The notes under the pieces are model-generated. The model made no database searches, was not told the DNA's origin, and saw only the letters and a program-made list of their open reading frames with translations. A DNA stretch of 64,000 nucleotides from Macrostomum lignano (lineage: Eukaryota). The translations under genes and the position numbers were made by a program. The stretch covers positions 45,489 to 109,488 of the forward strand of contig NIVC01003072.1 of the NCBI GenBank assembly GCA_002269645.1, given 5' to 3'. Positions within the stretch are counted from its first letter, which is position 1. Each line of letters opens with the position of its first letter. This document shows, one piece after another, positions 1 to 33,336 of the stretch.

Positions 1-3561
<3,561 letters not shown>

Positions 3562-11800: not shown

Positions 11801-12581
11801 CTTTCCCGACTTTCATTGAACCTTTTTCGGTAAACATCAAAGGCACCTCCCGACTTTCATTTAACCTTTTTCGGTAAACATCAAAGGCGCCTCCCGACTT
11901 TCATTGAACCTTTTTCGGTAAACATCAAAGGCACCTCCCGACTTTCATTGAACATTTTTCGGTAAACATCAAAGGCACCTTCAGACTTTCATTGAACCTT
12001 TTTCGGTAAACATCAAAGGCACCTTCCCACTTTCATTGAACCTTTTTCGGTAAACATCAAAGGCACCTTCCCACTTTCATTGAACCTTTTTCGGTAAACA
12101 TCAAAGGCACCTCCCCACTTTCATTGAACCTTCTTCTGTTAACATCAAAGGCACCTCCCGATACGATAGTTATTATCTTAATCCCCCTGCAGGGCACGAA
12201 GAGCTGGTCCGCTGCATCCGTTTCGACTCCAAACGAATTGTGTCTGGCGCCTACGACGGCAAGATCAAAGTGTGGGACCTGCAGGCCGCCCTTGACCCCA
12301 GATCGTCGGCCGACGCGCTGTGCATCGTCACACTCAGCGAACACTCTGGCAGGGTGTTCCGCTTGCAATTCGACGAATTTCAGATCGTTTCATCGTCCCA
12401 CGACGATACTATCTTAGTGTGGGATTTCCTTGGCGACGATGGGGATCAGGGGGGCACTAAGGAAGCCGCCGATGAAGAGGTTGATGAGGCTGTTGTGCTG
12501 CACTTTGCCGATGCCGACGCCGAGGATGAAGGCGGCGGTGGAGACGCCGAAGACAACGAGGCCGGAGATGAGGATGATTGA
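8892..12581 (+). CDS. BTRC: beta-TrCP / Slimb F-box WD40 protein; exons 8892-9218, 9929-10252, 11137-11635, 12193-12581
   Basis: D-domain ([21 protein letters not shown]), F-box ([27 protein letters not shown]) and WD40 repeats ([88 protein letters not shown]). Splice phases 0,0,1 are consistent. An upstream exon cannot be excluded. Confidence 0.97.
9280..9885 (+). repeat. ~28-bp minisatellite (cagttgctgggccagcctcccagatcct), beta-TrCP intron 1
   Basis: Tandem units seen directly. Confidence 0.95.
10350..11060 (+). repeat. ~33-bp minisatellite (gggattataaaccacaagagaggattatcaatt), beta-TrCP intron 2
   Basis: Tandem units seen directly. Confidence 0.95.
11690..12160 (+). repeat. ~44-bp minisatellite (actttcattgaacctttttcggtaaacatcaaaggcacctcccg), beta-TrCP intron 3
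   Basis: Tandem units seen directly. Confidence 0.93.
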
Positions 12582-14929: not shown

Positions 14930-15650
14930 AAGTTTCCCGTAGTTGTTTTGGATTTACAAAAGGGGAATCCCTTATTTATTTATAGTTTTAACATAGGATC
15001 CCGTAGCTGATTTAAGTTTTACAATGGGGAATCCCGTAACTATTTTTAGTTTTGCAAAGGGGAATCCGGATTCCGGTTGCTGTTTTTGGTTCTACAAATG
15101 GAAATTCCATAACTTTTTAGTTCTTCAAAGGGGAATCCCGCCGGTTTTTTAGTTTTACAACAGGAATTCCATAGCTATTTTAGTTTTGCAAAGGGGAATC
15201 CCATAGCTATTTTAGTTTTGCAAAGGGGAATCCCATAGCTATTTTAGTTTTGCAAAGGGGAATCCCATAGCTATTTTAGTTTTGCAAAGGGGAATCCCAT
15301 AGCTATTTTAGTTTTGCAAAGGGGAATCCCATAGCTATTTTAGTTTTGCAAAGGGGAATACCATAGCTATTTTAGTTTTACAAATGGGAATCCCATAGCT
15401 ATTTTAGTTTTGCAAAGGGGAATCCCATAGCTATTTTAGTTTTGCAAAGGGGAATCCCATAGCTATTTTAGTTTTGCAAAGGGGAATTCCATAGTCGTTC
15501 TGGAGTTTTACAAAAGAGACTCCCGCTGCTATTTATAGTTGCTAAAAAGGAAATCCCATATTATTGATTTTTAAGTGAGGAATCCTGTCCCGTCAATATT
15601 TGCGAGCGTATGCTAGCTGGTGTCTATGATCCCCCAAAGGGGAATCCCAT
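14930..15650 (+). repeat. 32-bp minisatellite (ggggaatcccatagctattttagttttgcaaa) with a homogeneous core at about 15180-15485 and decayed flanks
   Basis: Tandem units seen directly. Confidence 0.9.
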
Positions 15651-15750
15651 CGATAATGTTTTTATCGATTCAGATAAAAAACGGGGAACCTTCTCGCAAT
15701 GGTTTAACACCTCTAAAAATAGAAACAATTTTTCGTCTCTTTGAGTCATT

Positions 15751-17247
15751 TTACTCAGCTGACTCGGCCGAGCTGCTGCTGCTTAGCGAGGAGTCCGACG
15801 TCCAGGCAGCCTCATTGTCGTCATCTTGGGTGGTCGCCGCGTTGTCTCCGACGCCTGGAAATTCCGTCAGCGTCGCCGTGCCGCCAAACCTCACGGCGGA
15901 AACTTTGGCGGCGGCATCGCGACCGCTGTTTCTTGCCTTCTGCTTCGACTTTCGCTTTCGTCTGCTAGCGTTTTTTTCGCCTTTGCGTTTCTTAGAATCC
16001 GCATCCCGAAGTTGTTCTGGCGAATGCATGGTCTGTAGAACAGCGCGCAGCAGGCACAGGAACGCTTCGCTGGCGCTCTCCGAGTCTAGCGCCGTTGCCT
16101 CGCGCCAAACCAGGCCGTGGCGCCGAGCCAGCGCCAGGCCGGACTGAGCTCCGGAGGGCGTAGGGAGCTCGCGGCGGTCGAGCTTGTTGCCGATCAGAGC
16201 GATGGGGGCGTCGGCCGGTAGTCCGACGCTGTCGCCGTCCTGTGCCGGGCGCAGTCGCTGCAGCCAGGCCTCGCAGTCGCGGAGGCTGTCCGCGTCAGTG
16301 ACGTCATAGACCAGCATAGCACACTGGCAGCCGCTGTAGTAGCCCTCCGAGTTGCTGCGATGGCTGGGAGTAATGGCGGTGGACTTTGTTAGCACCTACC
16401 TCACTCCCTGCACCCACCTCACTCTGCACCCACCTCAATCTGCACCCACCCCACTTTCCGCACCCGCCTCACTCCCCGCACCCACCTCACTCCCCGCGCC
16501 CACCTCACTCTGCACCCACCTCAATCTGCACCCACCCCACTCCCTGCACCTACCTTACTCCCTGCGCCCACCTCACTCCCTGCACCTACCTCACTTCCTG
16601 CACCCACCTCACTCCCTGCGCCCACCTCACTCCCTGCACCCACCTCACTCCCTGCACCCACCCCACTTTCCGCACCCGCCTCACTCCCCGCACCCACCTC
16701 ACTCCCCGCGCCCACCTCACTCCCCGCACCCACCTCACTCCCCGCGCCCACCTCACTCTTCGCACCCACCTCACTCCCCGCGCCCACCTCACTCTGCACC
16801 CACCTCAATCTGCACCCACCCCACTCCCTGCACCTACCTTACTCCCTGCGCCCACCTCACTCCCTGCACCTACCTAACTTCCTGCACCCACCTCACTCCC
16901 TGCGCCCACCTCACTCCCTGCACCCACCTCACTCCCTGCACCCACCCCACTTTCCTGCACCCGCCTCACTCCCCGCACCCACCTCACTCCCCGCGCCCAC
17001 CTCACTCCCCGCGCCCACCTCACTCCACACATCCCTTCGCGCACCACCGTGCGAACGTCAAAATCTCCTCACCTCTCCTGACCGGCAGTGTCCCAAATCT
17101 GGCATTGGACCGGCACCCCGTCAACCTTGACCAGTCGGCTCTGCAGACTCGCGGCCACTGTCGGCGCATACGATTCGTTGAATTGGCCGCCTACAAAGCG
17201 AGCCAGAAGGCTTGACTTGCCAACGCCAGCGTTCCCAACAACGATTA
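15751..17247 (-). CDS. Divergent Rab GTPase domain IV and C-terminal tail (exons 17247-17073, 16363-15751)
   Basis: [37 protein letters not shown], then a polybasic tail and an acidic/Ser end. Exon 17247-17073 is missing from the ORF track. Confidence 0.9.
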
Positions 17248-20200
17248 CTGCGGGAGTTGATCGGTTTAATCATTGGTAAACATAAAGTTGTTTGGCGCCA
17301 TCGATTCTTATCGTTTAGTTTGGCGCCATTTGTGTCTAGGTTGACGCCTTTAGTGTCTAGTTTGGCGCCATTTGTGTCTAGTTTGGCGCCATTTGTGTCT
17401 TATTTAAAAGCCCTAAAAATCGCCCAAGATCACCATTGACGAGCACAGCAGGCCTGTCGGGCACAGACGCAGTCTGGGACTCAATCAACGGCAGCTCCTC
17501 CACGCTGGCACCTGGCGGCGCGCTTTGCCGCTGACTGTCAACGGTGAATCTGGACAAAACTTTCGAATCGAAATTCGACGAACTCATATCTTTGACACTC
17601 GCCAGCATGCTGTCAATCTCTGCTATCCGTATTGACGCGTTGGCCGCCTTCGTCGCTGTCTCCGCCTTCTGAAGCTTCATCTGGGCGAGGCAGCGACTCT
17701 GCAGGCCCCTGAAAGCCTGGCCGACATTCTGTCCGGTGCGGGCGCTGACGCCCCAGCACAGCTCGACGCCGTGCGACTTGGCGAACACGTCAGCCTCCTC
17801 CTGAGTCACGGCGGCCTCATCCGAGTCGCTCTTGTTGGCCACCAAAGCCACGGGCGTGGACTCTGGCGCGGAGGCCCGCAGCTCCTGCAGCCAGCGCTCG
17901 CAGCTGTCGAAGCTGTCGCGGTTCGAGGCGTCGAAGATCAGCAGGGCGCCGGCGCAGCCTCGGTAGTAGGCGCTCGTGATGGAGCGGAACCTGCGGATGT
18001 CGGGGAGGGGCGAAGGGCGGTCTAAGGGGTGTTATGGTTTAGGTTTTATGATCCGGGTGTTATGATCCAGGTGGTACGATCCAGGTGTTATAATCCAAGT
18101 GTTATGATCCAGGTGTTATGATCCAGGTGTTATAATCCAGGTGTTATAATCCAGGTGTTATGATCCAGGTGTTATGATTCAGATATTATGATCCAAGATT
18201 TATAATTTGAGTGTCATGTCATGCTTCCGGTGTTTTAATATAGGTTTATGAGCCTAGATCATAAATGGGCAACCCCCCTGATTTACACTGGCCATGTGAC
18301 TTACTTTTTGACCAAAAATGCGACTTACCTGTGAAAGAAACCCTAGAGCAACATTAACGCAATTTTGGGTAAACGGCAGGAGTAACCATGACTCTCTTTT
18401 AAGGGCTAAATGCCTCGTCATCTAATTAGTACTACGTCTGTATTCTTTGGGGTGGGCATTTTTGCGACTTACCCCTGGTCCACCACAATTTATGGTGGCC
18501 AGATCGGCCAGCAGTTGCGCATGTATGGCCTAGATTCATGATTCAGTTATTATGATCCAGGTGTTATGGTCCCTGTTGTCTAATGAGTTAGTGATAGTAA
18601 CTTATGTGTAAATCTAATGGGTTTTATAGCACATAATTTCGTCCAAAAATAAAGTTGATAAAGGAAACAGCGAGCTATCCGACTTCAACCTCACCTCTGT
18701 TGTCCCGCCGTATCCCAAATCTGAGTTTGCACTCGCGACCCGTCAATGTCGCTGTTCACCACGCGAAAGTCCACTCCGATGGTGGGCATTGCCTTGAGGC
18801 TCTCGTCAAATTCCTGGTCAATAAATCGGCGGACCAGGCAGGACTTGCCGACGCCGGAGTCTCCGATTAGCACCGCTGCGTGGGAGTGGGCGGCGCGACG
18901 TGATGGACAACAAGCATTGTCACACCCACCTCACTCTACACCCACCTCCGAACCTCACTCCACTCCGCACCCACCTCACTCCGCACTCACCTCATTCCGC
19001 ACTGACCTCATTCCACACCCACCTCACTACACACCCACCTCACTCCGCACTCACCCCACTCCACACCCGCTTCACTCCGTATCCACCCCACTCTAAATCC
19101 ACCCAACTCCGCACCCACCCCACTCCGCACTCACCCCACTCCACACCCGCTTCACTCCGTATCCACCCCACTCTAAATCCACCCAACTCCGCACCCACCC
19201 CACTCCGCACTCACCTCACTCCGCACTCACCTCACTCCGGATCCACCCCACTCCGCACTCACCTCACTACACACCCACCTCACTCCGCACTCACCTCACT
19301 CCGCACTCACCTCACTCCTGATCCACCCCACTCCGCACCCACCTCTCTCCGCACCCACCTCACTCCGCACTCACCTCACTCCGCACCCACCTCACTCCGC
19401 ACTCACCTCACTCCGCACCCACCTCACTCCGCACCCACCTCACTCCGCACCCACCTCACTCCGCACCCACCTCACTCCACACCCGCCGCACTCCGCACCC
19501 AGCTCACTCCACACCCACCTCACTCCACACCCGCCGCACTCCGCACCCAGCTCACTCCGCATATCCATCTCACTTCGCACCCACGTAACAGTCAGATGGT
19601 AAAGACAAGGATGCTATATCTCACTTTTTATCACATAGTCAGGAGAGCGATCATCGTTTAGGTTTGCCTGTCCCACTGCTGCTGGCTTCGAAATGGGAGA
19701 CTCCTTCGACTGCTTAGTAGATTTACTCGCATTAATGGCCTTCGGAGCGAAAGCAGCCGATTCGTTTGACTGCTGGGTCTGTGTCGAACTGGGAATCGGT
19801 TATAAAGAGAAAATATTTGCGTTGTTATGCGGATGAAGTTGTGTTGCTATGGGGATGAAATCGTGTTGCTATGTGCTTGAGGTTTTATTGCCATGGGGAT
19901 GAATTTTTGTTGCTATGGGGGATGAAATCGTGTTGTCATGTGTTTGAGGTTGTGTTGCGATGGGGATGATGTTGTGTTGCTATGACGATGAGAATGTATA
20001 GCTAAAAGGGATTAAATGCTGTTGCAAAGGCCAAACACCAACCCGAATTGCTGGCTCTGGCTCTGCAGAACCCGACTCTGCAGGCCCCTGAATGCCTGGC
20101 CGACATTCTGTCCGGTGCGAGCGCTGACCCCCCAGCACAGCTCGACGCCGTGCGACTTGGCAAATTCGTAAGCCTCCTCCTGAGTCACGGCGGCCTCATC

Positions 20201-23200
20201 CGAGTCGCTCTTGTTGGCCACCAGAACCGCGGCCGTGGAGTCTGGCGCGTTGGCCCGCAGCTCCTGCAGCCAGCGCTCGCAGCTATCGAAGCTGTCGCGG
20301 TTCGAGGCGTCGAAGATCAGCAGGGCGCCGGCGCAGCCTCGGTAGTAGGCGCTCGTGATGGAGCGGAACCTGCGGATGTCGGGTAATTTATGGATGGGTT
20401 TGGCCCCAGTCTAACAGTAACAGGTGTCTCTGTCTAACAGGTGTGAGGCCCCAGTCTAACAGGTGTCTCTGTCTAACAGGTGTGAGGCCCCAGTCTAACA
20501 GGTGTCTCTGTCTAACAGGTGTGAGGCCACTGTCTAACAGGTGTGAGGCCTCTGTCTAACAGGTGTGAGGCCTCTGTCTAACAGGTGTGAGGCCTCTGTC
20601 TAACAGGTGTGAGGCCTCTGTCTAACAGGTGTGAGGGCCCAGTCTAACAAGTGTGAGGCCTCTGTCTAACATATAAGCCTTCTCAGGCTAGCGTAATTCC
20701 ATCTCAAACTTACCTCTCGGCACCAGCTGTGTCCCAGAACACACTCTTGACTCGACAGCCATCAATATTGTCTTTCACAGCTCGAAATTCCACTCCAATA
20801 GTTTGCGGCATTTCGTTAGTCGAATAAAATTCTTTGTCTGCAAATCGCTGAAGCAAGCTGGACTTCCCAACACCGGAGTCACCAATTAGAAGAACTGAAT
20901 GATAGATTGAATGAGCGTAATGCAATAATTCTTTATTTTTACCTTCTACAATAAAACAGTTCAATCCTGCTTACCTTTCATCTGATAATCAATATGTTCG
21001 TTAGAATTTTCACTTTTCTTAGGCACCAACTGAGGCAATTGTCGCATGTCAGTTGACTTCATTGGAGCCTGATTTGAACTCAATCTGTGCATACATGTGC
21101 AACCTCCAAAATTCGGTCAGCCGTGCGACTTAGTTTTAACAAAAATGCGACGTAGTTTTTGGCCAAAAATGCGACTTACATATAAAAAAACCCGAAAGCA
21201 AAATTAACGCAACTTTGGGTAAACGGCAGGAGTAACTATGACTGTTTTATTAAGCTAAAATGCCTCGTCAGCTACTTAGTACTACTCTTCAGGTTATTTT
21301 TTGGGTGGGCATTTTTGCGACTTCCTTGATTGGCCGCCAAATCGGTCGGCCGGATCGGCCGACTCGGCCGACTGTTGCGCATGTATGAATCTGTGGGAAG
21401 GCGAAACCCTAAGTTCTTGGTTACCATGCGAGAGTATCTTGTTGCTATGCGAGACTAGCGTATTGCTATGCGAGACTAGCGTGTTGCTATGCGAGACTAG
21501 CGTGTTGCTATGCGAGACTAGCGTGTTGCTATGCGAGACTAGCGTGTTGCTACGCGAGACTAGCATGTTGCTATGCGAGACTAGCGTGTTGCTATGCGAG
21601 ACTAGCGTGTTGCTATGCGAGACTATCGTGTTGCTATGCTTTCTATTCTGAAACTTTCAGTAGCTCAATAACTAACCCATCAACTTTGCTCTGCAGCACC
21701 CGACTCTGCAGGCCCCTGAAAGCCTGGCCGACATTCTGTCCGGTGCGAGCGCTGACGCCCCAGCACAGCTCGACGCCGTGCGACTTGGCGAACTCGGCCG
21801 CTTCCTCCTGAGTCACGGCGGCCTCATCCGAGTCGCTCTTGTTGGCCACCAGAACCACGGACATGGACTCTGGCGCGGAAGCCCGCAGCTCCTGCAGCCA
21901 GCGCTCGCAGCTATCGAAGCTGTCGCGGTTCGAGGCGTCGAAGACCAGCAAGGCGCCGGCGCAGCCTCGGTAGTAGGATGATATTATCGTGCGGAATCTG
22001 GAGTTTTGTTGAAGTCAGAGGCAAGTGTACATTAGGGGGTAGAGATTGAATGGGGTTGGTCAGACAGACAAGTGTACATTTGGAAGGGGTAGAGATTGAA
22101 TGGGATGATAAGAGACAAGTGTACGAGCGTACATTTGGAGGGGGTAGGAATTGAATGGGATTGGTCAGACAAGTGTACATTAGGGGGTAGAGATTCGGGC
22201 TTGATCAGAGGCAAGTGCGCACAAGTAAAAATGCAAGGAATCACCTCTCTTGTCCAGCGGTGTCCCAGATCTGGCACTTGATGCTTGACCCATCGATTTC
22301 ATTTTTAACAATTTTGAAGTCCACACCAATTGTTGGGATCGCGTTTTGACTTTCTTCGAATGAGTTTTCAGCAAATCTGCGCAACAGGCAGGATTTCCCG
22401 ACTCCGGAATTGCCTATGAGCAGCACTGTGGAATTAAAGATAAACAAGACGATTTCTTAATATACATGTAAAAAGCCATTTAAGGACAAATATTTTTAAT
22501 TTAAACTGGAAGAAATCGCACATTTTATCAAGCGTTGCTGTTTTGCTTCAGCTGCCGTCTCGGATCCGTCAACAGCAGTTCTGGACTCTGGGTTTTGAGC
22601 TGCTTTGGCTTCATTTTGTCTGAAAAGAATGTTTGGTAAAGTGAGTTTTGAATAGAACTACGTGTAGACACGTTCTTAACCGAACCAGACACGTTCTTAA
22701 CCGAACCAGACACGTTCTTAACCGAACTAGACACGTTCTTAACCGAACCAGACACGTTCTTAACCGAACCAGACACGTTCTTAACCGAACTAGACACGTT
22801 CTTAACCGAACCAGACACGTTCTTAACCGAACCAGGCACGTTCTTAACCGAACCAGACACGTTCTTAACCGAACCAGACACGTTCTAGCGGCATTATACA
22901 CTTTCACAGAGTTAAAAACACATTTTACCAAAATCAGACCAGGTTAGAGCTGTTTAGAGCGCGCTCAAACTCACTCAGTTTTGCTGCCTTCAACTCCCTG
23001 ACCATCTGCCGTGGTGGCAGCGGCAGCGACTGCGGCGGCAGCGACCTGCCTCACCAGTTCCTTCCTGTCGTCGCCCCAGGCCCGGAATCGCCGAAAGAAC
23101 TCTTTGTCGGGTCGATCGTGCAAAGCGGCCCAATCCAGGCCCTGAGCAGACCGCGACATCGGATGTCTGCTCAACCAATCCTGCCGTCTAGCCGTCATAT

Positions 23201-26200
23201 CATCGCTTGTCGTCGCTGCAGCAGCAGCTTCAGCCGAGTCTTTGGACTCGCTTAGCAACTCAATAGCGAGAATGTAGGCCTGATCTAGCCATCGAATATA
23301 AGAGCCGTAGCATTCAGTCTGTTCGATGACGTCATTGGCCAAGGCAAAGGCTCGTTTGGGATTGCCGGCGGCTCGGTGCAGCCTTTAGAGATTAAAAAGT
23401 ATTAAAATTATTGAATCTCAATTAGATGACCCAAGTTTACCAAAAGATTGACAGACTCATGCAGGGATTAACAGACTTAAAATCCCAGGCTCAAAATCTC
23501 AGACTCAAAACCTCACAGACTCAAAATCTCACAGACTCAAATCTTACAGAATCAAAGTCTCACAGAATCAAAATCTCAAAGGCTCAAATCTCAGAGACTC
23601 AAAATCTCAGACTCAAAATCTCAGACTCAAAATCTCACAGACTCAAAATCTCACACTCACTCAAAATCTCACACTCAAAATCTCACAGACTCAAAATCAC
23701 CCAGACTCAAAATCTCACATACTCAAAATCACCCAGACTCAAAATCTCAAAGACTCAAAATCACCCAGACTCAAAATCTCACCGACTCAAAATCTCAGAC
23801 TCCAAATCCCAGACTCCAAACCTCACAGACTCAAACTCTCCCAGATTCAAAATCACCCAGACTCAAAATCTGACAGACTCAAAATCTCACAGACTCAAAA
23901 TCTCACAGACTCAAAATCTCAGAATAAAAAATCTGACAAACAAAAAATGACCCACTTAGCCAACTGGAGTTTAGCTCTGAGCAGCAGGTGCCCTTGAGCT
24001 GGCTGGCTGTCAATCAGCGCTTCTAGAGCTTCATCAGCCAGCCGCTCAGCCTCCGGACGGTACTCCCCCGAAGGCACATCGGCCAGAAGTCTGCCCAGAC
24101 AGATTCTGGCTTGCACAGCAGCCGGACTGTGCCGACCGATGGTATTCGAGAAAATTTCAACAGATTTTCTACCGAATTCGATGGCGACTTGAAGAAGTTC
24201 AACTGGCAGCATGGCGGGGTTCGCTAGGCGAGCAGCTTGGGCTAAATTAGTCATCAAGGAGGCAGCGTTGGGATGCTGAGATGCCGACTCGCCAGAGCTC
24301 ATTCTGACTGCGGCTAGAGAGGCTTCCACGTGAGCGACAACTTCTTGGGGCTCCGCAATTGCACCCTGACCGCGGCGGCTGCGATGACGGAGCCGGAGAA
24401 GGTGCGCCAACGACAGGTGCGACTGGACTTCGGCTAGTAGCGGGTGCTGGTAGCCCAGGATGAGCTGAGCGAATAAAGATGCGTTCTGGAATTTGATGGA
24501 TAGGAAATTTATTAAATTTTATAAGAATGAGGTGAGAATTAGCCTTAGAAACGGAATTGATTTTTCCTAGAAAGAGAGAATAAGTTTCCTATAGAATGAG
24601 ATCCAATTTTTACGAAAAGAACGAAGTTTTTTAGCTGATGCGATATTTTCTAAGAATTAGGTGTAATCTAAAAATTATATTTTGTTAGAACAGAACGACA
24701 TTGGCGGAATTAGTTGGATTGATGTTAGCATTCGTCAGCAAATGAAATCAGTGGTTCCTTTGTTTATTGGTGTATTAGGAACGAATAAAGAAAAAGGGGA
24801 AGATAAAGATATGACGATGCGCCTGCCGTATATTTATAGATATGACTTGGTTTTCGAGAAAGTTCTAAAAATATTTTCTACAGTATAACAAATTTAACGT
24901 GCTGATTAATTTACAGATAATTACACAGATATTTACTATGCTATATCCAGGACGTTTACTATACTATTTACTATAGTACATAATTTAGTATTCATTAATA
25001 AATGCTTGAAACTAGCTCGTAGAATATTATTAGGTGAAGATAAACTTCTGCAAAGATCGCGACATTTGGATTTGTGCATGGTTTCTAGAATGTTAGATTA
25101 ATACGGTTAATGAAAGTTTCTCGAACGAAGGGCGGTACAATGTCAAATCGATTCTTATTTAAAATTTACATCGGACTATCTTAAGATACTGACATGGTTT
25201 TTAAACCATGAGATACTTAAGATTGCACCGAATTACTTACTTAAAAGCTAAAAAAATTACACTAAAATAACTATTACTTAAAAAAACTAAATTTTCTGAC
25301 TTTGGTTTGTTTCCTTCTTAGAATGACATCGTATAAATTTCGATACAGTAAAAATAAAATTCGTTTTTCATACATATGAGACCAAATAGTTTTCTAGGGA
25401 TGTTAGAGAGATATTTCCAAACACTAGAAAATAAAACTTTGCACACCCGTGACCAAACTTACCACAGCAACTTCGACTCCAAAATCATCTTGACAGAAAG
25501 CGTTTGAAAATTTGACAAAGTTTAACAACGACTTGATGTATTCCGGCGATTCTGTTTTGTAAAATTTGCTGAAATAATAATAAATTAAAATTTATGTTAA
25601 TATTAAGTCAAGCGGGTATGGAAATTACAAAAAAGTACTTACTAAGCATGCTGTACGCAAGCAACAGCTAATTTTTCCGCTTTTCCTTCATCGGAATTTG
25701 TTAGGTAAAGTTGCAAAGCGTGGTAGAGAATTTTGAAGACGGCCTCTGTATCATTAAGATCCACAGTCTAAAATTGATATTTTATAAAATTTTCCAAGTA
25801 TAAAAGAAATCTTTTCTATATTCGCTCAAGAGACGACTCAATTTATGTATAATTACCATAATTTAAATTCAATAAAAGTCTTTTTAATTTAAATTTTTAC
25901 TTACTATTTTTCGTTTTTTTATTATTATATATTAAAAAACGTAAGAAAAAAATAAATATAACTAAATATTTAATAGAGCTATTGATCATTTAAAACTATA
26001 AGTAAAACAAATAATAATGAATCCTGTTTAATAAAAGAAAACTCTGCAGGCCCGCACTGGCAAATAATTAATCAATTAATATTCTTATGCTTGCATATTC
26101 TAAAAAATCTAAAAACAAATTAGCATGCACTCACCGAGATGGCGCTACCAAAAGCACCCAACGCGGACGCCAGGCTACCCTGGTCCAGCAGCATCCGACC

Positions 26201-29093
26201 AATCTGTGCCTGCAGCAGGGCCTGGTTGTCCATCACTTTTTGGCCAAACGACAAGCGGTTGATTCTGGCCGCCGTGGCCTGGGCCGCCTGACTGGCAGCG
26301 TCGGCCAGCTGGTAGTCGGCGTTGTTGAGCCTGGCTTCCATCAGCCTGACGCTGGCGCGGTAGGTTGGCAGCAGGGCTTCCACGCAGTCGCCGCCGAACC
26401 TTTTCAAGGAGATTAGTGAGAGTTATATACAGTCGCTTGTGTCACAGAGACTATGGTGGCTTTGTGTGTCACATGGATGTAATAAAATGGCAACATGGCC
26501 ATACATGTGCAACACCCTGGCGAGGGGCTTAGCCAAGGTAAGTCACAAAAATGCCAACCCAAAAATAGACATAGCACTAATTAGGTACTGAGACATTTAG
26601 CCTTAAAAATCAAGTCATAGTTACTCCTGCCGTTTACCCAAAATTTTGTTAATTTTAGCACAAAAGCCCCAAATGAATGTCACCGTCAGTCATAGTCATC
26701 GGATGTTGTGATGGAATTATTTTATCACTAGATCGCCGAGCGTTACACTAACAACGTGTGAAACAAGTTTTACTTCAGACAGCTCAGATACTTAAGCAGC
26801 CTCACCTATTCAGATAGTCGCACAAAGACCCGGCAACTGTCTCGCACTCTCTAAACAGATTGACTCCGGCCAGAAAGTCGAACAGTCGGCCGGCCAAATT
26901 TGCCAGCTTAGTAGCCGCGTACCGCGACCATCCACCGTCGGTGAAAAGTCGTCGACCGTCCGGCCCGGTAGATAAGTTAGCAAACGCGGTTGCTATGGCG
27001 TTGCCAAGGCTAGGCGCATCGGCTAGTAAGTATTTATAAGCCAGATGACGCTTGCGAATGTCGCACAGCAGACGGTGCAGCGGCGAAATGAAGCAGACCA
27101 GCATGAGTCGTTCGGGATTGGCCGAACCGGCGGCTTGCAAGGCGAACTCGTCGGCGGTTCGCAGTCGCGACAGGCATCGACGCTCGTGCTTGGCCGCGGA
27201 GCGACCGCTGCCGCCGTTAGCTGTCCAGGCTTCGTAAGTTCGAGCCAGGTGCTCGGGCAAGTCCTCCGGTAGGCGACTCAATCGAATAGACGGATTGGCT
27301 TCGAGCTGACTCAGTCTGGACTTGGCCGCCGAGCGTAGCGCCTTCCAACGCTGACGATGCTCTGCAGACGTCGGATCGTCTTCTTGAGGTTGAATCGGCG
27401 GCAGCGGCGGCTGCTGCTGCTGCTGCTCAGAGTGTTGCATTGAGTCTGTGGAACTCGATTTCAGATTGGCTAGATTTGTGCTGTCTAGAAAGTCAACCAG
27501 GATTTGATGATTCCGAGCGGTGGTGGCGTCGACGGTGGATGTTGCCGATAGAGACGTCCTGGGTAGGTGACGGGACTTTGCTTCTAGATCGCTTGCTCTA
27601 GAGGTTCCTCTGGTGTGGATTAGATCTAGAGGGCGATTCTCTGGTGCAGATTAGATCTAGAGGGCGATTCTCTGGTGCAGATTAGATCTAGAGGGCGATT
27701 CTCTGGTGCAGATTAAATGTAGAGGGCGATTCTCTGGTGCAGATTAAATGTAGAGGGCCATTCTCTGGTGTAGATTAGATCTAGAGGGCCATTCTCTGGT
27801 GTAGATTAGATCTAGAGGGCCATTCTCTGGTCCAGATTAGATCTAGGGGGCTGGTTTTCAGAATAGAGATTCGAGGGCGATTCTCAGAACAGAGATTTGA
27901 GGGCGATTCTCAGAACAGAGATTTGAGGGCGATTCTCAGAATAGAGATTCGAGGGCGATTCTCAGAATAGAGATTCGAGGGCGATTCTCAGAATAGAGAT
28001 TCGAGGGCGATTCTCAGAATAGAGATTCGAGGGCGATTCTCAGAATAGAGATTTGAGGGCGATTCTCAGAATAGAGATTCGAAGAACAGAAGGGCGTTCA
28101 TTCGGCAATACTTGCAGCTCACATTCCCACCTGAACTTGTTGTACCACTGGGTGCTGGGATCCTTGCTGGGCAGCATGTCAAGCAGCATTCGCGTCTTCT
28201 CAGACCTGTTGGCACCGCGGGACACGAAGCGAACATCGGTGTCGCTGAGAATACCTTCACGTCTCAGGTAATCAACCACGGGATCTACATTGAGCTGCTG
28301 TACAAGGCAGACTCGATTGACGCGAAGTCGAAGAACATTTTGGGCCTCTCGTTGGCTCACTGAGCTGACGCGGTCTTGCACAGATCTTGATTTGGGTTTT
28401 GAATGCAAAAATAGCTTTTTTTCAAAGACTTCTTTCATTTTAATTTTGATAGCCATGCAAAGCAAAATGTCTAACTTTTAATTTAGTTTTCTATGCTAAA
28501 TCATAATTAGAAAATTAGCTTTAAGTGCATAATTTAAGAGGAAAAGTTAGAATTGATTTTCAGTAATTTTTATTCCTAAGAAGGTATGGCAGTTATTGAT
28601 AAATAGCATAACAACCTAAAGCAAAGATATTAAACAAAATGCTATAAAAGCATTATTGCAATTATTAAAGCTATTACTGATAAAATAAAAAATCGATATA
28701 CTATATATATTACCTAGTGACAATTAATATACAATTATATTTTAAACCAGTTGACCAAAAGTAATATTAATAAGGTTTTTTGTTTAGCACATGCCATATG
28801 AATTCTGATGTTCTGCACTTAATGACTAGACAATGTTAGTAATGTAAATTCTTCTTAAATGATGTACGAGCCTTTTAAAAGCAACAGTCGACAAATAAAC
28901 AAAACATATGTCTAAAAATTAGATGTTTAGTAGAGAGGTAAAATTGATCGCATACCTAGATAGATACCTACCGACAAACCATTTTTATTATATGGAGTAC
29001 ACGAATATCTTAAAATGAAAAACATTGAAGATTAGATTACCTCGAAGAAGCGTTACCAACTTTCTCTTGCAAAGTTGGAAAATTTCTGCTCAT
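15751..29093 (-). CDS. Predicted ~1800-aa CARD - APPBP2-like (BC/cullin box + TPR) - 4x Rab GTPase protein; exons 29093-29041, 28385-28131, 27558-26806, 26399-26135, 25767-25643, 25568-25463, 24485-23956, 23382-22975, 22619-22522, 22425-22245, 21997-21677, 21084-20975, 20894-20714, 20369-20043, 19788-19625, 18875-18695, 17990-17434, 17247-17073, 16363-15751
   Basis: All 18 introns are GT-AG with matching phases. Summed exon length is 5403 nt (1801 codons including the stop) with no internal stop. The junctions rebuild conserved motifs, for example QRLIK|[19 protein letters not shown]|[18 protein letters not shown]|[12 protein letters not shown] and WDTAGQER|FR. The first exon and start codon are less certain. 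Confidence 0.85.
16394..17030 (+). repeat. 18-bp minisatellite (cacccacctcactccctg), intron within Rab domain IV
   Basis: Tandem units with the same CACCCACCTCACTCC core as 240-722. Confidence 0.93.
17434..18875 (-). CDS. Rab GTPase domain III plus linker (exons 18875-18695, 17990-17434)
   Basis: [38 protein letters not shown]. Confidence 0.93.
18040..18200 (+). repeat. 14-bp minisatellite (tgttatgatccagg)
   Basis: Tandem units; a further unit resumes after the MITE at about 18550. Confidence 0.85.
18260..18527. mobile_element. hAT-type MITE (copy A)
   Basis: Ends CATAAATGGGCAAC / GTTGCGCATGTATG; perfect 8-bp TSD GCCTAGAT (18252-18259, 18528-18535); interior shared with 21090-21387. Confidence 0.9.
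18920..19580 (+). repeat. ~16-bp minisatellite (cacccacctcactccg)
   Basis: Tandem units; explains ORF 18900-19661. Confidence 0.92.
20043..20894 (-). CDS. Rab GTPase domain II (exons 20894-20714, 20369-20043)
   Basis: [38 protein letters not shown]. Confidence 0.93.
20420..20670 (+). repeat. 22-bp minisatellite (tctaacaggtgtgaggcctctg)
   Basis: Tandem units. Confidence 0.9.
21090..21387. mobile_element. hAT-type MITE (copy B) inserted at a splice acceptor
   Basis: 14-bp TIR CATACATGTGCAAC / GTTGCGCATGTATG; perfect 8-bp TSD AATCTGTG (21082-21089, 21388-21395). Confidence 0.93.
21430..21630 (+). repeat. 21-bp minisatellite (gcgagactagcgtgttgctat)
   Basis: Tandem units. Confidence 0.92.
21677..22425 (-). 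CDS. Rab GTPase domain I (exons 22425-22245, 21997-21677)
   Basis: [38 protein letters not shown]. Confidence 0.93.
22015..22220 (+). repeat. Degenerate ~44-bp tandem repeat (acaagtgtacattagggggtagagattgaatggg...)
   Basis: About 4 diverged units in the intron of Rab domain I. Confidence 0.75.
22665..22885 (+). repeat. 21-bp minisatellite (gacacgttcttaaccgaacca)
   Basis: Tandem units. Confidence 0.93.
22975..27400 (-). CDS. APPBP2/PAT1-like region (BC box, LPxxL cullin box, TPR solenoid) of the fusion gene
   Basis: Motif-level collinearity with APPBP2 as recalled: [16 protein letters not shown] vs TLYNTAISAV..SLPENI; [11 protein letters not shown] vs KVLRALDKRHL; [10 protein letters not shown] vs NKAALYGELC; [20 protein letters not shown] vs KAEQLIKHAV..KHPKYSDTLL. 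No alignment tool was run. Confidence 0.75.
23470..23935 (+). repeat. 16-bp minisatellite (aaaatctcacagactc)
   Basis: Tandem units. Confidence 0.9.
26500..26680. mobile_element. Truncated, oppositely oriented copy (C) of the hAT MITE family
   Basis: Starts with CATACATGTGCAAC. Contains gttactcctgccgtttacccaaaa, the reverse complement of the internal core of copies A and B. The second end was not found. Confidence 0.8.
27620..28080 (+). repeat. Compound minisatellite: a 31-bp unit (27620-27840) followed by a 26-bp unit (27860-28080), sharing the core gagggcgattctc
   Basis: Tandem units seen directly. Confidence 0.9.
28131..28385 (-). CDS. CARD (death-fold) domain exon of the fusion gene; the last helix continues in exon 27558-26806
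   Basis: [52 protein letters not shown] followed by [10 protein letters not shown] fits the CARD six-helix pattern (LxxxLxVxxVxDYLxxxGILS..R.EK.R.LLD.L). Confidence 0.8.
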
Positions 29094-29493
29094 TTCCTCT
29101 TAAAAAGTATCTAGTAGTCTTATTTTTAAACACACGCAAAGTATCCAAAATTGCTAGACTACCTTACAGTCCGTGAGCTATAGATCATTCTTGGGTCTTA
29201 TTAAACTTGAAATCGTTACCCCAAACAAAAAAATACTTACATAAATTTGTTCTATTTTCAATCTGTTATATCAAAAAACTTTTTATTTATTTGATACTTG
29301 CGCTATTACTATAGAATTAAGGGCGAAGTAATTTTGTTCAGAAGATTTTGTTTTACTTGTTGTAGCTAATAGTGTCGCTCCTATTCAGTTTAAAATTTGA
29401 ATATGTTTTCGGCTATATACAAAATCAAATCATCGGTTTGATCTATACCAGCGTCTTTGTATTTTCCTACTGACAAGAGAAGCAAAGCTCCTA
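29094..29493. promoter_or_regulatory. Putative bidirectional promoter / 5' UTR region between divergent start codons
   Basis: 400 bp between the ATG at 29093 (-) and the ATG at 29494 (+). Called on position only; no motif was identified. Confidence 0.45.
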
Positions 29494-30397
29494 ATGGAAG
29501 AAGAGCAAAGCGATTTTGTTATTCCCGTAAAGACGGATACTGACGAATTCGTCTTGCGAGGTCGCCCTTGCGAGCTTTCCTCATTTTCTTTTGTCCCTCC
29601 AGAGCGCCATGCACCGAGGGAACGTACATATTTCAACGTAGATAAAAATTTAAGATTTTGCCACTAGTATGAAAGTAGCTTCCAGACCATATATAAGCAT
29701 TTTACATGCCCAGCTGTCCTAAAGTAATACTGGCTTAAACCCTCTAAAGTTAGAACAGACAAAATAATATAGAGTTGGTAATTTTTTTGTCAGTTTTAAG
29801 TGCTTTAATTTTATTTTAAAACCCACGAGACTTTGAAAATAGATTATATATAAATAAAGGAAAGGCGAAATTGAAGACTACAACTACCTTAGATGCAGCG
29901 CAGTATACAGTAAAAATAGATTAAAATTTCAATACATTTCCTCTCTCACCCTAGCTATTGCCTTTACCGCCCATCCCACAGGAACGCTACTCGGCCTATG
30001 GCTACGATAGGATTTTTCACCAGGAGCGCGATTTCAATGCCAAGCTGCACAGAGACGACAGGGAGCATGCAAAGTCTCAAGGCCTCCAAGTGCATCAGGA
30101 GGTAATTTAAATGTTTTGTAACGGCTAGTAGTGAACTTTATAAGTTCAAAACATTTACACTGCAAATAATTACATTTTAACGGCTTGGTACGTTGATGAT
30201 CCGTTTTAACACGGTTCCTGGATATAACGATATTTCCAGGAAATTTCAAAGCCGGTACCGACTCTCTACTCGTCTGTGTACGGCAAGCGGCTATCGAATC
30301 AGCTGGACCCCCGGATCGGGCGCATTGCCGCATCGGCATCGTTCAGTCCGAGTTCTACAGGCGAAACGGCACAGAGATCAATGGGCACAAGGCGTAG
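29494..30397 (+). CDS. CFAP90: CFAP90/C5orf49-like ciliary protein; exons 29494-29637, 29982-30101, 30240-30397 (apparent 1-nt deletion at 30308-30312)
   Basis: SSFSFVPPERHAPRERTYF / FNAKLHRDDREHAKSQGLQV / PVPTLYSSVYGKR / VQSEFYRRN match recalled C5orf49 motifs (SAFSYIPP, KLHRDDREHAKSLGLHV, SSVYGKR, QADFYRKN). The gene is not in the ORF track, and the first donor (GTAGAT) is weak. Confidence 0.85.
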
Positions 30398-32034
30398 ATT
30401 AAGGTTCAAACGCTCAACTATATTTATTAATTAATAATTACAGCAACGAAATTTTCTCTTTCCTTAATTCTATTCTTGTTATAATAAGCCAACAGTTTAT
30501 TGTTTAATTATATTGCTAAATAATGTTTGATAGAGTTCATGGCGTGTTCCCGTATGGAACTGGATTTGAACTGTTCTAATATGCGAAATAAACAAATACA
30601 TGTCCACGTATCTTTGTTCTTTTGCATTCCTAATGAGATGAGTTCAACTTTTATTGTCTTCATTATTTAGTTTAACGTACATCTGTACATGTACAGAACG
30701 AAAAGGACGAAATCCAGCATTCTGATGCCGTAGTTTTTTTATCTTGTTAGCTGCCCGCTGAGTTGCAGATGGCCCGTCGCTGGAGGTCACCCCCACTTTC
30801 CTTTTCTTCACAGGACGGCTCTTTCAGTTCAGTGTTGTCACTCTGAGTGCCAATACTGAGAAATCCCCCAGCCGGTTCGTCTTGGTCACGCACTGCCGCC
30901 GTGCTCGCTCGGACAAAATCTGCTTCCATCGCTGCATCTTGATGAAGGCATATTCTGATTGCCGCAGTGAAGTCTCATTGTCTGCAAGTTAAAAATATTG
31001 TGTTCTGAATTCCTGGGATTGTAACTCCAACTGTGCCCCCCAAGCGCCAACCTAAAGGGTGAAATGGATCTTTTTGGCGCCGAGTGCCATTTTTTATGCC
31101 CTGTTGGATCTTTCAAGAGGAGTAGAATAATGAGGGGTAATATATAGGGTGACACACAACAGAGGGTCGCGTCTCGGTGGGGGTGGGTGGAGCGAGCCAA
31201 TCAAATGTGATTCCCGCGGGAATGACCCGTGGGAATCCCGCGGGAAATCAGTTCCTAATTCCCGTGGCCATGACTGTACACTGTAAATCGTAAAAATAAC
31301 AGCGATTATTGATAAGAGTATCAATAATTCCTATACAGTATTCGCCCACTATAAGCAAAATTCTCGTTGTATTTATATTAAGTTATAATTTAAATCCATC
31401 ATATATATTAATGGACAACTGAAGTATTAAAAATAATTTTACGTTTGCAAACAAAAGATAAGATTTTTTTGTTAATTTAATACAAACGTAAGAGAACATA
31501 TTGATTTTCAAGTCCCAAAAATTGTTTATTAAGAATGAAAAACCCAAGTAGGGTCTGTATACTTATACGGCCAGTTTATGCCTGTAAATATGCAGGATGC
31601 AGAAGCAGATTTTACCAAAAACCACAGAAGCAAACACAATAGAAAAAACAATTCAACCAAAAAATATTGATTAATAGAACAATACCGATTGCCACAGTTT
31701 CAGTGAGTATTAATCTCACGTTTTTAGCAGCTTAGATACGCTTTGTGCAATTCATTGCAGCAAAAAGCCAAATAGTTACCAATGTACGATATTGCAATTG
31801 ATCATTTATCCAAACGTGAAACAGAAAAATAAAATTAATAATAGAATTTCAAGATCACTCAGGCTGGAATTGATGATCAGAAATAGATTATTTTTGAATG
31901 GGACAAACAGAACAGTTTATTATCAACAAAAGGCGTTCGTTTCAACTTGAGTAGGGCTGAGAGTGGCTTCCGTTACAAACAAGAGAAATGAGAGCTTTGA
32001 GAAATGAGAAATGAGATGCAGAACCTCAGGAGAG

Positions 32035-32440: not shown

Positions 32441-32941
32441 TCAACGGAAGATCCTCATGCTGGCCGCCAGGCTGCTGAACTCCTCAAAGCTGATCTGACC
32501 GTCTCCGTCGGTGTCAGCGGCCGCCATCATCTGGTCGAGGTCGTGCTCGCTCAGGCCCTCCTCTAACAGGTCGTTCATCACGTGAGCCAGCTCAGCCCTG
32601 GAGATGAAGCCGTCCTTGTTTCTGTCCAGCAGCTCAAAAATTCGCTTCCTCTCGTCGACATCTTCATCTGTCGATGCCGATGTCGACTTGCCGTTGGCTT
32701 TCTCGGCGAAGGCGTCCATCATGGCTACGAACTCGGAGAATTCCAACCGGCCGTTGGAGTTCTTGTCGAACTCGCGGATTAGCGAGTCGGCCTCAGCTCG
32801 GGTCAGGGCCTGCCCGGCAGACCGCATCAGCCTGACGAGTTCGCGAGCCTCAATCGCTCCGCTGCCATCGACATCGAATTTGTCGAACACTTCGCGTAGA
32901 ATCTCCTGACTGACGGCCCCAGTGCCGCTCTGGTTGGACAT
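32441..32941 (-). CDS. Calmodulin-like protein, 4 EF-hands, intronless CDS (166 aa)
   Basis: Loops DVDGSGAIEARE, DKNSNGRLEFSE, DRNKDGFISRAE, DTDGDGQISFEE. Confidence 0.95.
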   Translation of the reverse strand: MSNQSGTGAVSQEILREVFDKFDVDGSGAIEARELVRLMRSAGQALTRAEADSLIREFDKNSNGRLEFSEFVAMMDAFAEKANGKSTSASTDEDVDERKRIFELLDRNKDGFISRAELAHVMNDLLEEGLSEHDLDQMMAAADTDGDGQISFEEFSSLAASMRIFR

Positions 32942-33336
32942 TTCACAGCAGTGGCTGTCTGTCGATTTTTGTATTGCAGCGCCTTATCCGGCCGACTGGG
33001 AATGCAAATTGACGAGCAATTCTGCTGCCGCTCTGAAATATGCTGAGTGGAAGGCAGCTCTTGGCAGTGTTTTGAGCGCCGTGTTGGGGTTGGCCTGCAG
33101 CCAATGCTGCTTCTCAGCTCTGCGAGATGCGTTTGCCTCACCTCTCTGCAGCCTGTGACTGGTACACGCCTCTGCTACTCCTCCTGCATGCAGCTTCCAA
33201 CTCGTCTCCGTCTGTTTCTCCCTCCCCTTGCAGCTGTTGCTCCCGCGGTAGCCTGTGACAGCTCTTCCCGCTGCCTGCCTGAGCCCTGCTTGACAGCCGC
33301 ATTGTTGCTGGGGGGAGTTGGGGACTGCGAAGTACG

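What the first reader, a model, noticed from the sequence alone, without database searches (positions are those of the whole stretch)
21082..21395. hAT MITE target-site duplication has duplicated a 3' splice site, creating a one-Rab vs four-Rab switch
Seen: the TSD AATCTGTG reads CACAG|ATT on the sense strand and spans the acceptor of exon 21084-20975. The upstream copy (AG at 21392-21391) keeps the native pyrimidine tract tttcgccttcccacag. Splicing there reads in frame into the MITE ([31 protein letters not shown]) and stops at about 21294. The downstream copy (21086-21085) restores the full ORF but is preceded by TIR sequence with a poor pyrimidine tract. Inference: this allele may yield a truncated CARD-TPR-Rab(I) protein or NMD-targeted mRNA alongside, or instead of, the full-length protein.
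Basis: partly seen in the sequence, partly recalled or inferred. Interest (0 to 1): 0.72.

Follow-up and report, generated by a model that had tools for sequence, protein, structure and literature searches.

The report
Transposon duplicates splice site, truncating gene
A 298-bp miniature transposon landed on an intron-exon boundary of a Macrostomum lignano (flatworm) CARD-TPR-Rab gene and duplicated the splice acceptor; the public transcript-based gene model uses the upstream copy, so the protein ends inside the transposon after one Rab domain, which is a clean but ordinary case of transposon-caused truncation.

Summary
An 8-bp direct repeat (sense CACAG|ATT) flanks a 298-bp element with 14-nt terminal inverted repeats. 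Two paralogous contigs of the same assembly carry the empty site with a single 8-mer.

The window is Macrostomum lignano Mlig_3_7 contig NIVC01003072.1. Its GenBank protein BOX15_Mlig018981g1 (1063 aa) comes from an annotation built only from RNA-seq and transcripts. It maps exactly onto 12 exons, and the last junction is 21677>21390, the upstream copy of the acceptor. The truncated one-Rab product is therefore already the deposited product.

Two claims are not shown:
- A "switch". No model uses the downstream acceptor at this locus. The four-Rab protein (about 1800 aa) is inferred from an open reading frame, consistent intron phases, pN/pS of about 0.37, and partial transcript-based models at the paralogous loci.
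- hAT membership. It rests on the 8-bp duplication alone, and the termini do not fit the hAT consensus.

This is a new member of a known kind (transposon exonization and premature termination). Interest is moderate to low.

The parts
21388..21395 (-). Upstream copy of the 8-bp target-site duplication (sense CACAG|ATT). Its AG (21392-21391) is the acceptor used in the GenBank CDS.
   Evidence: (D11), (exon 12 starts at 21390).
21090..21387 (.). 298-bp non-autonomous DNA transposon (MITE) with 14-nt terminal inverted repeats at 21090-21103 and 21374-21387. It has subterminal TGCGAC(T/G)TA repeats and no long ORF.
   Evidence: (I1, D3-D5). Absent from paralogs L002 and L003.
21082..21089 (-). Downstream copy of the target-site duplication. 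Its AG (21086-21085) would restore the native exon and the long ORF.
   Evidence: The homologous single acceptor is used in the paralog's CDS (P0122).
21294..21390 (-). Terminal coding segment derived from the transposon: 31 codons ([31 protein letters not shown]) plus the TAA stop at 21296-21294.
   Evidence: (exact mapping of P0121).
21246..21251 (-). AATAAA inside the element, 43 nt after the stop. Candidate poly(A) signal; its use is not tested.
   Evidence: sequence.
21174..21179 (-). GTAAGT donor-like site inside the element. With the downstream acceptor it would define a 95-nt mini-intron and make a 211-nt stop-containing cassette exon. Inferred only.
   Evidence: M. lignano donor motif is GT[G/A]AG (PMC8629364).
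21391..21676 (-). Intron 11 as spliced in the GenBank model (286 nt). It contains a 21-bp minisatellite of 10.2 copies at 21426-21639.
21677..21997 (-). Exon 11, the second exon of Rab domain I. It ends GAT GG, followed by the donor GTTAGT.
   Evidence: Pfam Ras family E=6.8e-49.
21294..29093 (-). Whole GenBank CDS BOX15_Mlig018981g1: 12 exons encoding CARD, a TPR-like region of about 700 aa, one Rab domain and the transposon-derived tail.
   Evidence: Pfam CARD E=1.3e-9.
20975..21084 (-). Linker exon 1 (LSSNQ...YQMK). This is the native continuation after Rab I and is bypassed as coding sequence in the annotated model.
   Evidence: The same junction is present in the paralog CDS P0122. Intact in L003.
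15751..20894 (-). Remaining exons of the unannotated Rab II-IV part: 20894-20714, 20369-20043, 19788-19625, 18875-18695, 17990-17434, 17247-17073, 16363-15751. The frame is open throughout and would add 768 aa.
   Evidence: The last two junctions are validated by P0123 at L003. pN/pS is 0.36-0.37 against the paralogs.
18252..18535 (.). Second full copy of the same element (18260-18527) with its own 8-bp duplication GCCTAGAT. It lies in the intron of Rab III and is also specific to this locus.
   Evidence: Empty site in L002. Absent from L003.
26500..26660 (.). Third, older and partial copy in inverted orientation. It is shared with paralog L002.

Best explanation
A small non-autonomous cut-and-paste DNA transposon that makes 8-bp target-site duplications inserted into one of three paralogous copies of a M. 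lignano CARD-TPR-multi-Rab gene. The insertion sits on the 3' splice site of intron 11.

The staggered cut spanned CACAG|ATT, so repair left two identical acceptors 306 bp apart. The upstream one keeps the intron's own branch-site region and pyrimidine tract, and it is the first competent AG. The spliceosome uses it (shown by the deposited transcript-based CDS). The mRNA then reads 31 transposon-derived codons to a TAA inside the element.

The product is a 1063-aa protein. It keeps the whole conserved CARD-TPR module and one Rab domain, and loses the 768 aa (Rab II-IV) that the locus can still encode.

Inferred, not shown: the transcript either ends at the element's AATAAA, giving a stable short mRNA, or runs on with a premature stop.
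For: - Anatomy: the duplication, inverted repeats and both reading frames are as described.
- Real insertion: empty sites in two paralogous contigs. Both duplicated copies share a T where the empty sites have C.
- Real mobile family: a second insertion with its own 8-bp duplication and its own empty site.
- Identity of the window: it is 100% identical to NIVC01003072.1.
- Junction: GenBank protein P0121 maps exactly to 12 exons with last junction 21677>21390 and the predicted tail.
- Basis of the annotation: STAR, StringTie and TACO (isoform-frac 0.75), mapped de novo transcripts and TransDecoder, with no ab initio prediction (PMC5730564).
- No other model: no other gene model lies between this CDS and the beta-TrCP gene.
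- Native junction: at the empty-site paralog the CDS uses the native donor-to-acceptor junction (P0122).
- Core module retained: spiralian homologs of about 800 aa have CARD and TPR and no Rab, so the truncated protein keeps the conserved core.
Against: - I could not see reads. The junction is known only through the deposited CDS, and a few reads could have created it.
- GenBank holds only filtered 'coregenes' and the collection keeps only the longest product, so minor isoforms that use the downstream acceptor would be invisible.
- Rab exons are 93-97% identical between units and loci, so read mapping and transcript assembly there are error-prone.
- The downstream ORF is fully intact. That fits a very recent insertion, but it also fits continued use.
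- The element's inverted repeats pair in the predicted RNA fold (z = -1.9). That could bring the downstream AG close and allow leaky correct splicing.
Confidence: 0.8

Rival explanations
1. True dual use. Both copies of the acceptor are used at appreciable levels, so this locus makes both the 1063-aa one-Rab protein and a four-Rab protein of about 1800 aa, possibly in a regulated way.
For: - The downstream acceptor has the same -5..+3 sequence.
- Its pyrimidine content (0.47) equals that of three confirmed acceptors of this gene.
- A CTGAC branch-like site lies 32 nt upstream of it.
- The inverted repeats pair in the predicted fold and loop out the element.
- The downstream ORF is intact with pN/pS 0.37.
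Against: - No model with the downstream junction exists at this locus.
- TACO kept only isoforms at 75% or more of the major one, so the downstream form is not co-dominant.
- An intervening AG 13 nt after the CTGAC would give a frameshifted product.
- An intact ORF is expected anyway for a young insertion.
Confidence: 0.25
2. Annotation artefact. The upstream junction is a rare or spurious event promoted by the assembler, and the locus normally splices to the downstream acceptor and makes only the long protein.
For: StringTie and STAR accept junctions with very few reads. Multi-mapping was allowed up to 1000 hits. The region is repeat-rich.
Against: - A read across GATGG|ATTCATACATGCGCAAC can only come from this insertion allele.
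- The paralogs read GATGG|ACTGAGTTC.
- The upstream site is the native acceptor in its native context.
- No long isoform was retained, although it would have had the longer CDS.
Confidence: 0.05
3. Gene fission. Transcripts of the CARD-TPR-Rab I part end in the element. The Rab II-IV part is expressed separately from read-through pre-mRNA by spliced-leader trans-splicing onto the now partnerless downstream acceptor.
For: - 30% of M. lignano genes are spliced-leader trans-spliced, and an acceptor without a cis donor is sufficient for that (PMC8629364).
- Linker exon 1 has in-frame ATGs.
- At paralog L003 a separate 344-aa model covers only the Rab III tail and Rab IV.
Against: - No gene is annotated downstream at this locus.
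- Neither acceptor fits the trans-splice motif YTNCAG.
- The ATG at the end of the spliced leader would be out of frame.
- The L003 fragment is more simply explained by assembly breaks in near-identical repeats and a homopolymer frameshift.
Confidence: 0.05
4. Assembly artefact. The element was mis-assembled into this contig and does not exist at this locus.
For: Mlig_3_7 is a difficult, redundant, PacBio-based assembly. Likely homopolymer errors are seen in the paralogs.
Against: - Perfect 8-bp duplication that abuts the inverted repeats exactly.
- A clean single-copy target in two paralogs.
- An RNA-derived junction that reads into the element.
Confidence: 0.02

Closest known systems
Transposon-derived alternative terminal exons that truncate or re-tail a host protein, for example the CSB-PGBD3 fusion, where a piggyBac element in an intron supplies an acceptor and a poly(A) site (PMC2268245)
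   Same: A host donor splices to an acceptor at a DNA transposon. Downstream host exons are lost from the protein. A stop follows, and here a candidate AATAAA too.
   Different: Here the acceptor is not transposon sequence. It is the host's own acceptor, duplicated by the target-site duplication. The element supplies only 31 junk codons and a stop, not a domain. Conservation or function of the truncated form is unknown.
MITE-associated alternative splicing and exonization, for example the genome-wide survey in mulberry (PMC6593561); classical maize Ds/Mu insertion alleles (from my own knowledge)
   Same: A small non-autonomous DNA element within a gene alters splice-site choice and introduces a premature stop.
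   Different: The insertion is exactly on the splice site, so two identical acceptors compete. It occurs in a flatworm with weak acceptor consensus and spliced-leader trans-splicing.
hAT-superfamily MITEs
   Same: 8-bp target-site duplication (two independent insertions), short inverted repeats, subterminal short repeats, and a size of about 270-300 bp.
   Different: The termini begin CATAC rather than YARNG. The two target sites do not fit nTnnnnAn. No autonomous partner has been seen. From my own knowledge, P, Merlin, Zisupton, Novosib and some Mutator elements also make 8-bp duplications.
Spiralian CARD-TPR proteins of about 800 aa (Owenia, Lingula 'amyloid protein-binding protein 2'-like, Tubulanus, Lottia, Physella, Bulinus)
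   Same: The N-terminal 800 aa of the gene (CARD plus TPR-like region) is homologous to them, with E from 1e-54 to 1e-28 and 23-30% identity over nearly the full length.
   Different: The eight scanned against Pfam show no Ras/Rab domain. The tandem Rab array (4 units here, 6 at paralog L003) appears in this sample to be an addition specific to Macrostomum.

Membership tests
MITE (non-autonomous class II element) | Terminal inverted repeats directly flanked by a target-site duplication | tested here: met
   14-nt inverted repeats (13/14) abutting the 8-bp direct repeat. The second copy shows the same arrangement.
MITE (non-autonomous class II element) | Small, non-coding, multi-copy | tested here: met
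   The element is 298 bp and the second copy 268 bp. The sense-strand reading that enters the element from the upstream acceptor meets stops throughout. There are 3 related copies plus a fourth element that shares the terminus within 64 kb.
MITE (non-autonomous class II element) | Insertion polymorphism with a precise empty site | tested here: met
   Single CACAGACT in L002 and L003. Single GCCTAGAT site in L002 for the second copy.
hAT superfamily | 8-bp target-site duplication | tested here: met
   Two independent insertions, both 8 bp.
hAT superfamily | Terminal motif YARNG | tested here: not met
   The termini read CATAC. The consensus is taken from my own knowledge.
hAT superfamily | Target consensus nTnnnnAn | tested here: inconclusive
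   AATCTGTG/CACAGATT does not fit. GCCTAGAT fits at one position. Only two sites are available.
hAT superfamily | Autonomous relative with a hAT transposase and matching termini | not testable with these tools
   There was no access to the whole M. lignano genome. No DNA-transposase reading frame was noticed by eye in the part of the window's ORF list that was shown (the output was cut, and no transposase domain search was run).
Transposon exonization / transposon-caused premature termination | A mature transcript joins a host exon to sequence inside the element | tested here: met
   GenBank transcript-based CDS with junction 21677>21390. This is indirect, because the reads were not inspected.
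Transposon exonization / transposon-caused premature termination | The element supplies the stop codon | tested here: met
   TAA at 21296-21294, inside the element.
Transposon exonization / transposon-caused premature termination | The element supplies the poly(A) site | not testable with these tools
   AATAAA is present at 21251-21246.
Alternative 3' splice-site 'switch' | Both acceptors used in vivo | not testable with these tools
   Only the upstream junction is on record at this locus. No reads were available.
Rab GTPase | Ras-superfamily G domain with G1-G5 motifs | tested here: met
   Pfam Ras family: E=6.8e-49 for Rab I and 1.1e-34 for Rab IV. Best relatives are Rab11, Rab1 and Ypt at 45-48% identity.
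Rab GTPase | C-terminal Cys prenylation motif | tested here: not met
   No unit ends in CC, CXC or CAAX in the spliced model, and the units are internal domains. They are best called Rab-like domains.

The most novel reading that the evidence does not exclude
The duplicated acceptor works as a real domain-number switch or as a gene-fission point. In the switch version, pairing of the element's inverted repeats in the pre-mRNA loops the transposon out. The two identical acceptors then compete, and one locus makes both a one-Rab and a four-Rab CARD protein in a condition-dependent ratio. In the fission version, the stranded downstream acceptor is captured by spliced-leader trans-splicing, which splits one gene into two.
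Probability: 0.1. Interest if true: 0.6.

Novelty: new member of a known kind. Interest (0 to 1): 0.35.

Why it matters
It is a textbook-clean natural example of how a target-site duplication alone can create competing splice sites. The element contributes no acceptor of its own, yet it re-tails and truncates the protein.

It explains the odd C-terminus of a deposited M. lignano protein (UniProt 'CARD domain-containing protein'): the last 31 residues are transposon-derived.

It also shows that this element family was active after the recent genome duplication of M. lignano, and that the three paralogous copies of a CARD gene have already diverged in domain number (1 effective, 4 or 6 Rab units).

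For annotation, it flags that about 5.5 kb of intact Rab-coding exons downstream are unannotated at this locus.

Beyond that it is an ordinary consequence of transposon insertion. No function is known for the gene.

Tried and rejected
1. The first protein search, with a query spanning the Rab I to linker to Rab II junction, returned only generic Rabs and missed P0121, although 107 residues are identical. The third search again missed P0121's identical 35-residue tail. Negatives from that tool are therefore unreliable, and I did not use them as evidence that no long isoform exists.
2. A position weight matrix for acceptor positions -20..-6, trained on 17 acceptors of this gene, was uninformative: both candidates scored about -6. 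I used only the plain pyrimidine fraction.
3. Rfam scan of 15000-30000: no structured RNA family.
4. Literature search for the three locus tags: nothing. Search for M. lignano hAT or MITE descriptions: nothing relevant.
5. I considered reading L002's early stop as a second, independent truncation after Rab I. I rejected this as probably a homopolymer assembly error, because G5 replaces G6 or GGGGC in the same run, and the same thing occurs in one of three near-identical units of L003. L002's 4-nt deletion in Rab III exon 1 may be real.
6. I considered four separate Rab genes instead of one multi-Rab gene. I rejected this for three reasons. Rab first exons lack start codons. Intron phases repeat as 2-1-2 in every unit. 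The P0122 CDS crosses Rab I to the linker, and P0123 crosses the Rab III tail to Rab IV.
7. The hAT assignment was not upheld (see the membership test).
Full report
**What is in the sequence**

On the plus strand, AATCTGTG occurs at 21082-21089 and 21388-21395 (D11). The two copies directly abut a 14-nt inverted repeat: CATACATGTGCAAC at 21090-21103 and GTTGCGCATGTATG at 21374-21387, 13 of 14 complementary (I1). They enclose a 298-bp element.

The gene is on the minus strand. There each 8-mer reads CACAG|ATT.
- The donor of the preceding exon is GAT GG|GTTAGT, with GT at 21676-21675.
- Splicing to the upstream AG (21392-21391) reads [32 protein letters not shown] and a TAA at 21296-21294.
- Splicing to the downstream AG (21086-21085) reads [37 protein letters not shown] and continues.

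**It is a real mobile element and a real insertion**

- The terminal 14-mer occurs six times in the window against 0.44 expected.
- A second full copy at 18260-18527 has its own 8-bp duplication, GCCTAGAT. It is 84% identical over the core.
- A third, partial copy lies at 26500-26660.
- A 174-bp palindromic element at 2033-2206 shares the same terminus.

A protein search with the N-terminal part of the gene identified the organism as Macrostomum lignano. Looking up the two hits returned two contigs of assembly GCA_002269645.1.
- L001 (NIVC01003072.1) is 100% identical to the window. Window coordinate w equals contig coordinate w+45488.
- L002 (NIVC01000483.1) is a paralogous or homeologous copy, 88-98% identical.
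- A third copy, L003 (NIVC01000084.1), came from a later search.

Both L002 and L003 read ...ggtaaccaagaacttag[g/a]gtttcgccttcc CACAGACT gagttcaaatcagg..., a clean empty site with one 8-mer. Both duplicated copies in the window carry T where the empty sites have C. That is expected if the two copies arose from a single 8-mer of this locus. L002 also has the empty site of the second copy.

Wudarski et al. report that the DV1 line has extra large chromosomes, and that the assembly contains 180 Mb of duplicated blocks at 95% identity or more (PMC5730564). That accounts for the three copies.

**Which acceptor is used**

The GenBank protein of this locus is P0121 (BOX15_Mlig018981g1, 1063 aa; UniProt name 'CARD domain-containing protein'). 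It ends ...[44 protein letters not shown].

An exact protein-to-genome mapping gives 12 exons:

| Exon | Window coordinates |
|---|---|
| 1 | 29093-29041 |
| 2 | 28385-28131 |
| 3 | 27558-26806 |
| 4 | 26399-26135 |
| 5 | 25767-25643 |
| 6 | 25568-25463 |
| 7 | 24485-23956 |
| 8 | 23382-22975 |
| 9 | 22619-22522 |
| 10 | 22425-22245 |
| 11 | 21997-21677 |
| 12 | 21390-21297, then the stop |

The deposited model therefore uses exactly the junction 21677>21390 and ends in the element.

The Mlig_3_7 annotation contains no ab initio predictions. RNA-seq was mapped with STAR and assembled with StringTie. It was merged with mapped de novo transcripts by TACO (isoform-frac 0.75), cut at experimentally defined trans-splice and poly(A) sites, and ORFs were called with TransDecoder (PMC5730564).

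A junction read GATGG|ATTCATACATGCGCAAC can only come from the insertion allele, because the paralogs read GATGG|ACTGAGTTC. I take this as indirect but good evidence that the upstream acceptor is used in vivo and is the major assembled path.

No other gene model lies between this CDS and the beta-TrCP gene.

At the empty-site paralog L002, the CDS (P0122) crosses the same intron to the single native acceptor and stops two codons later (MD-stop). The reason is a 1-nt deletion in Rab I exon 2. This shows that the linker exon really is spliced to Rab I.

**Why the upstream copy wins (inference)**

The upstream copy retains the native intron sequence up to the AG. That includes a TAAC branch-like site 30 nt upstream and the tract tttcgccttcc. 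It is the first competent AG after that branch region, and the resulting intron is 286 nt instead of 592 nt.

- Pyrimidine fraction at -20..-6 is 0.67 upstream and 0.47 downstream.
- For 17 other acceptors of the gene the mean is 0.64 with sd 0.10, and three acceptors confirmed by the GenBank model are also at 0.47.
- The species' cis-acceptor motif is essentially CAG (PMC8629364).

Position, not tract quality, is therefore the likelier determinant.

The element also carries AATAAA at 21251-21246, 43 nt after the stop, and a GTAAGT at 21179-21174. After the upstream acceptor the mRNA could follow any of three paths:
- end in the element;
- include a 211-nt stop-containing cassette exon;
- include a 416-nt composite exon.

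All three give the same 1063-aa protein. Which one occurs decides whether the mRNA is a target of nonsense-mediated decay. I could not test it.

In the predicted RNA fold the inverted repeats pair and loop out the element between the two acceptors (z = -1.9). This is a conceivable route to some correct splicing, but it is speculative.

**Is there a four-Rab protein to lose?**

Downstream of the element the frame stays open through eight further exons, adding 768 aa for a total of about 1800 aa:

| Exon | Window coordinates |
|---|---|
| Linker 1 | 21084-20975 |
| Rab II exon 1 | 20894-20714 |
| Rab II exon 2 | 20369-20043 |
| Linker 2 | 19788-19625 |
| Rab III exon 1 | 18875-18695 |
| Rab III exon 2 | 17990-17434 |
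| Rab IV exon 1 | 17247-17073 |
| Rab IV exon 2 | 16363-15751 |

Evidence that these are real coding exons:
- Intron phases repeat (2, 1, 2) in each unit.
- The junctions Rab III tail to Rab IV exon 1, and Rab IV exon 1 to exon 2, are confirmed by the transcript-based model P0123 at L003.
- All exons are present in L002 and L003.
- pN/pS against either paralog is 0.36-0.37, the same as for Rab I.

So the exons have evolved as coding sequence. However, no complete multi-Rab mRNA is on record at any of the three loci. The 'four-Rab' product remains an inference, and the 'switch' has no evidence at this locus.

**What the gene is**

- Pfam finds CARD (E=1.3e-9), a weak TPR_12 match, and the Ras family for the Rab units.
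- A full HMMER scan with the first 864 aa found 34 relatives at E of 1e-10 or better. These include proteins of about 800 aa with a CARD domain and, in most, TPR matches, from Owenia, Lingula (named 'amyloid protein-binding protein 2'), Tubulanus, Lottia and Physella. None of the eight scanned against Pfam has a Rab domain.
- In this sample the Rab array therefore appears to be a Macrostomum addition. The truncated protein keeps the whole conserved module.
- The Rab units lack prenylation cysteines, so 'Rab-like' is the safer name.

**Superfamily**

The 8-bp duplication was seen twice. From my own knowledge, that size fits hAT but also P, Merlin, Zisupton, Novosib and some Mutator elements. 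The termini (CATAC) do not fit YARNG, and the two targets do not fit nTnnnnAn. No autonomous partner could be looked for. 'hAT' is unproven.

**Comparison and verdict**

Transposon exonization and transposon-caused premature termination are well known. Examples are CSB-PGBD3 (PMC2268245) and MITE-linked alternative splicing in plants (PMC6593561), both found.

The particular twist here is that the acceptor in use is the host's own, duplicated by the target-site duplication. That is neat, but mechanistically unsurprising. The predicted product is already in GenBank, although the transposon origin of its tail has apparently not been noted.

I rate this a new member of a known kind, with interest 0.35.

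**Limits**

No reads, no UTR or poly(A) annotation and no whole-genome access were available. The word-indexed protein search twice missed an identical protein, so I drew no conclusions from its negatives.

Noticed in passing
L003 1600-10000 (NIVC01000084.1), compared with window 17400-22000: The number of tandem Rab units differs between paralogous loci. The window and L002 have 4. L003 has 6, because the unit of Rab exon 2, linker 2 and Rab exon 1 is repeated three times with a period of about 2245 bp.
   Followed up: partly
L002 17059; L003 5426; L002 about 20150: 1-nt frameshifts sit in the same G-run (TGGGGGGTC or TGGGGCGTC becomes TGGGGGTC) in Rab exon 2 copies. These are probably homopolymer assembly errors, and they artificially truncate GenBank CDS P0122. 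L002 also has a 4-nt deletion (GACG) in Rab III exon 1 that may be real.
   Followed up: partly
window 15751-21084: About 5.3 kb holding eight intact Rab-coding exons (768 codons) has no gene model in GenBank at this locus or at L002. Only the last part is annotated at L003, as a 344-aa protein starting at an internal Met.
   Followed up: partly
window 20714-20894 and 17073-17247: Rab II has DTAGAE, with the catalytic Gln replaced by Ala, in all three loci. Rab IV has DTAGQES followed by a divergent switch II. These units may be GTPase-deficient.
   Followed up: no
window 21426-21639: A 21-bp minisatellite in intron 11 has 10.2 copies here and about 3 in L002 and L003. Many introns of this gene carry similar arrays, for example 22666-22886 and 20428-20671.
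   Followed up: no
window 2033-2206: A 174-bp long-arm palindromic element shares the 14-nt terminus CATACATGCGCAAC with the element under study. It is embedded in an (ATCT)n microsatellite and is probably a second non-autonomous family moved by the same transposase.
   Followed up: partly
window 22975-29093 (protein residues 1-860): The CARD-TPR module has relatives of about 800 aa in annelid, brachiopod, nemertean and mollusc genomes, and none of the eight scanned against Pfam has a Rab domain. Fusion to a Rab array was seen only in Macrostomum in this sample.
   Followed up: partly
window 760-3200 (+), 8835-12578 (+), 29413-30434 (+), 32444-32983 (-), 44994-45458 (-), 50017-50508 (-): Neighbouring genes, read by eye from ORF translations: an SLC1/EAAT-like transporter, beta-TrCP (F-box/WD40), CFAP90, two calmodulin-like EF-hand genes, and what looks like a retrotransposon reverse-transcriptase fragment. 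The Pfam labels for beta-TrCP and CFAP90 come, and the transporter's (PF00375) from the syntenic paralog. Synteny (CFAP90, CARD gene, beta-TrCP) is kept in L002.
   Followed up: no
tool behaviour: The word-indexed protein search failed twice to return P0121, although the queries contained 107 and 35 identical residues. The exhaustive HMMER scan found it.
   Followed up: no
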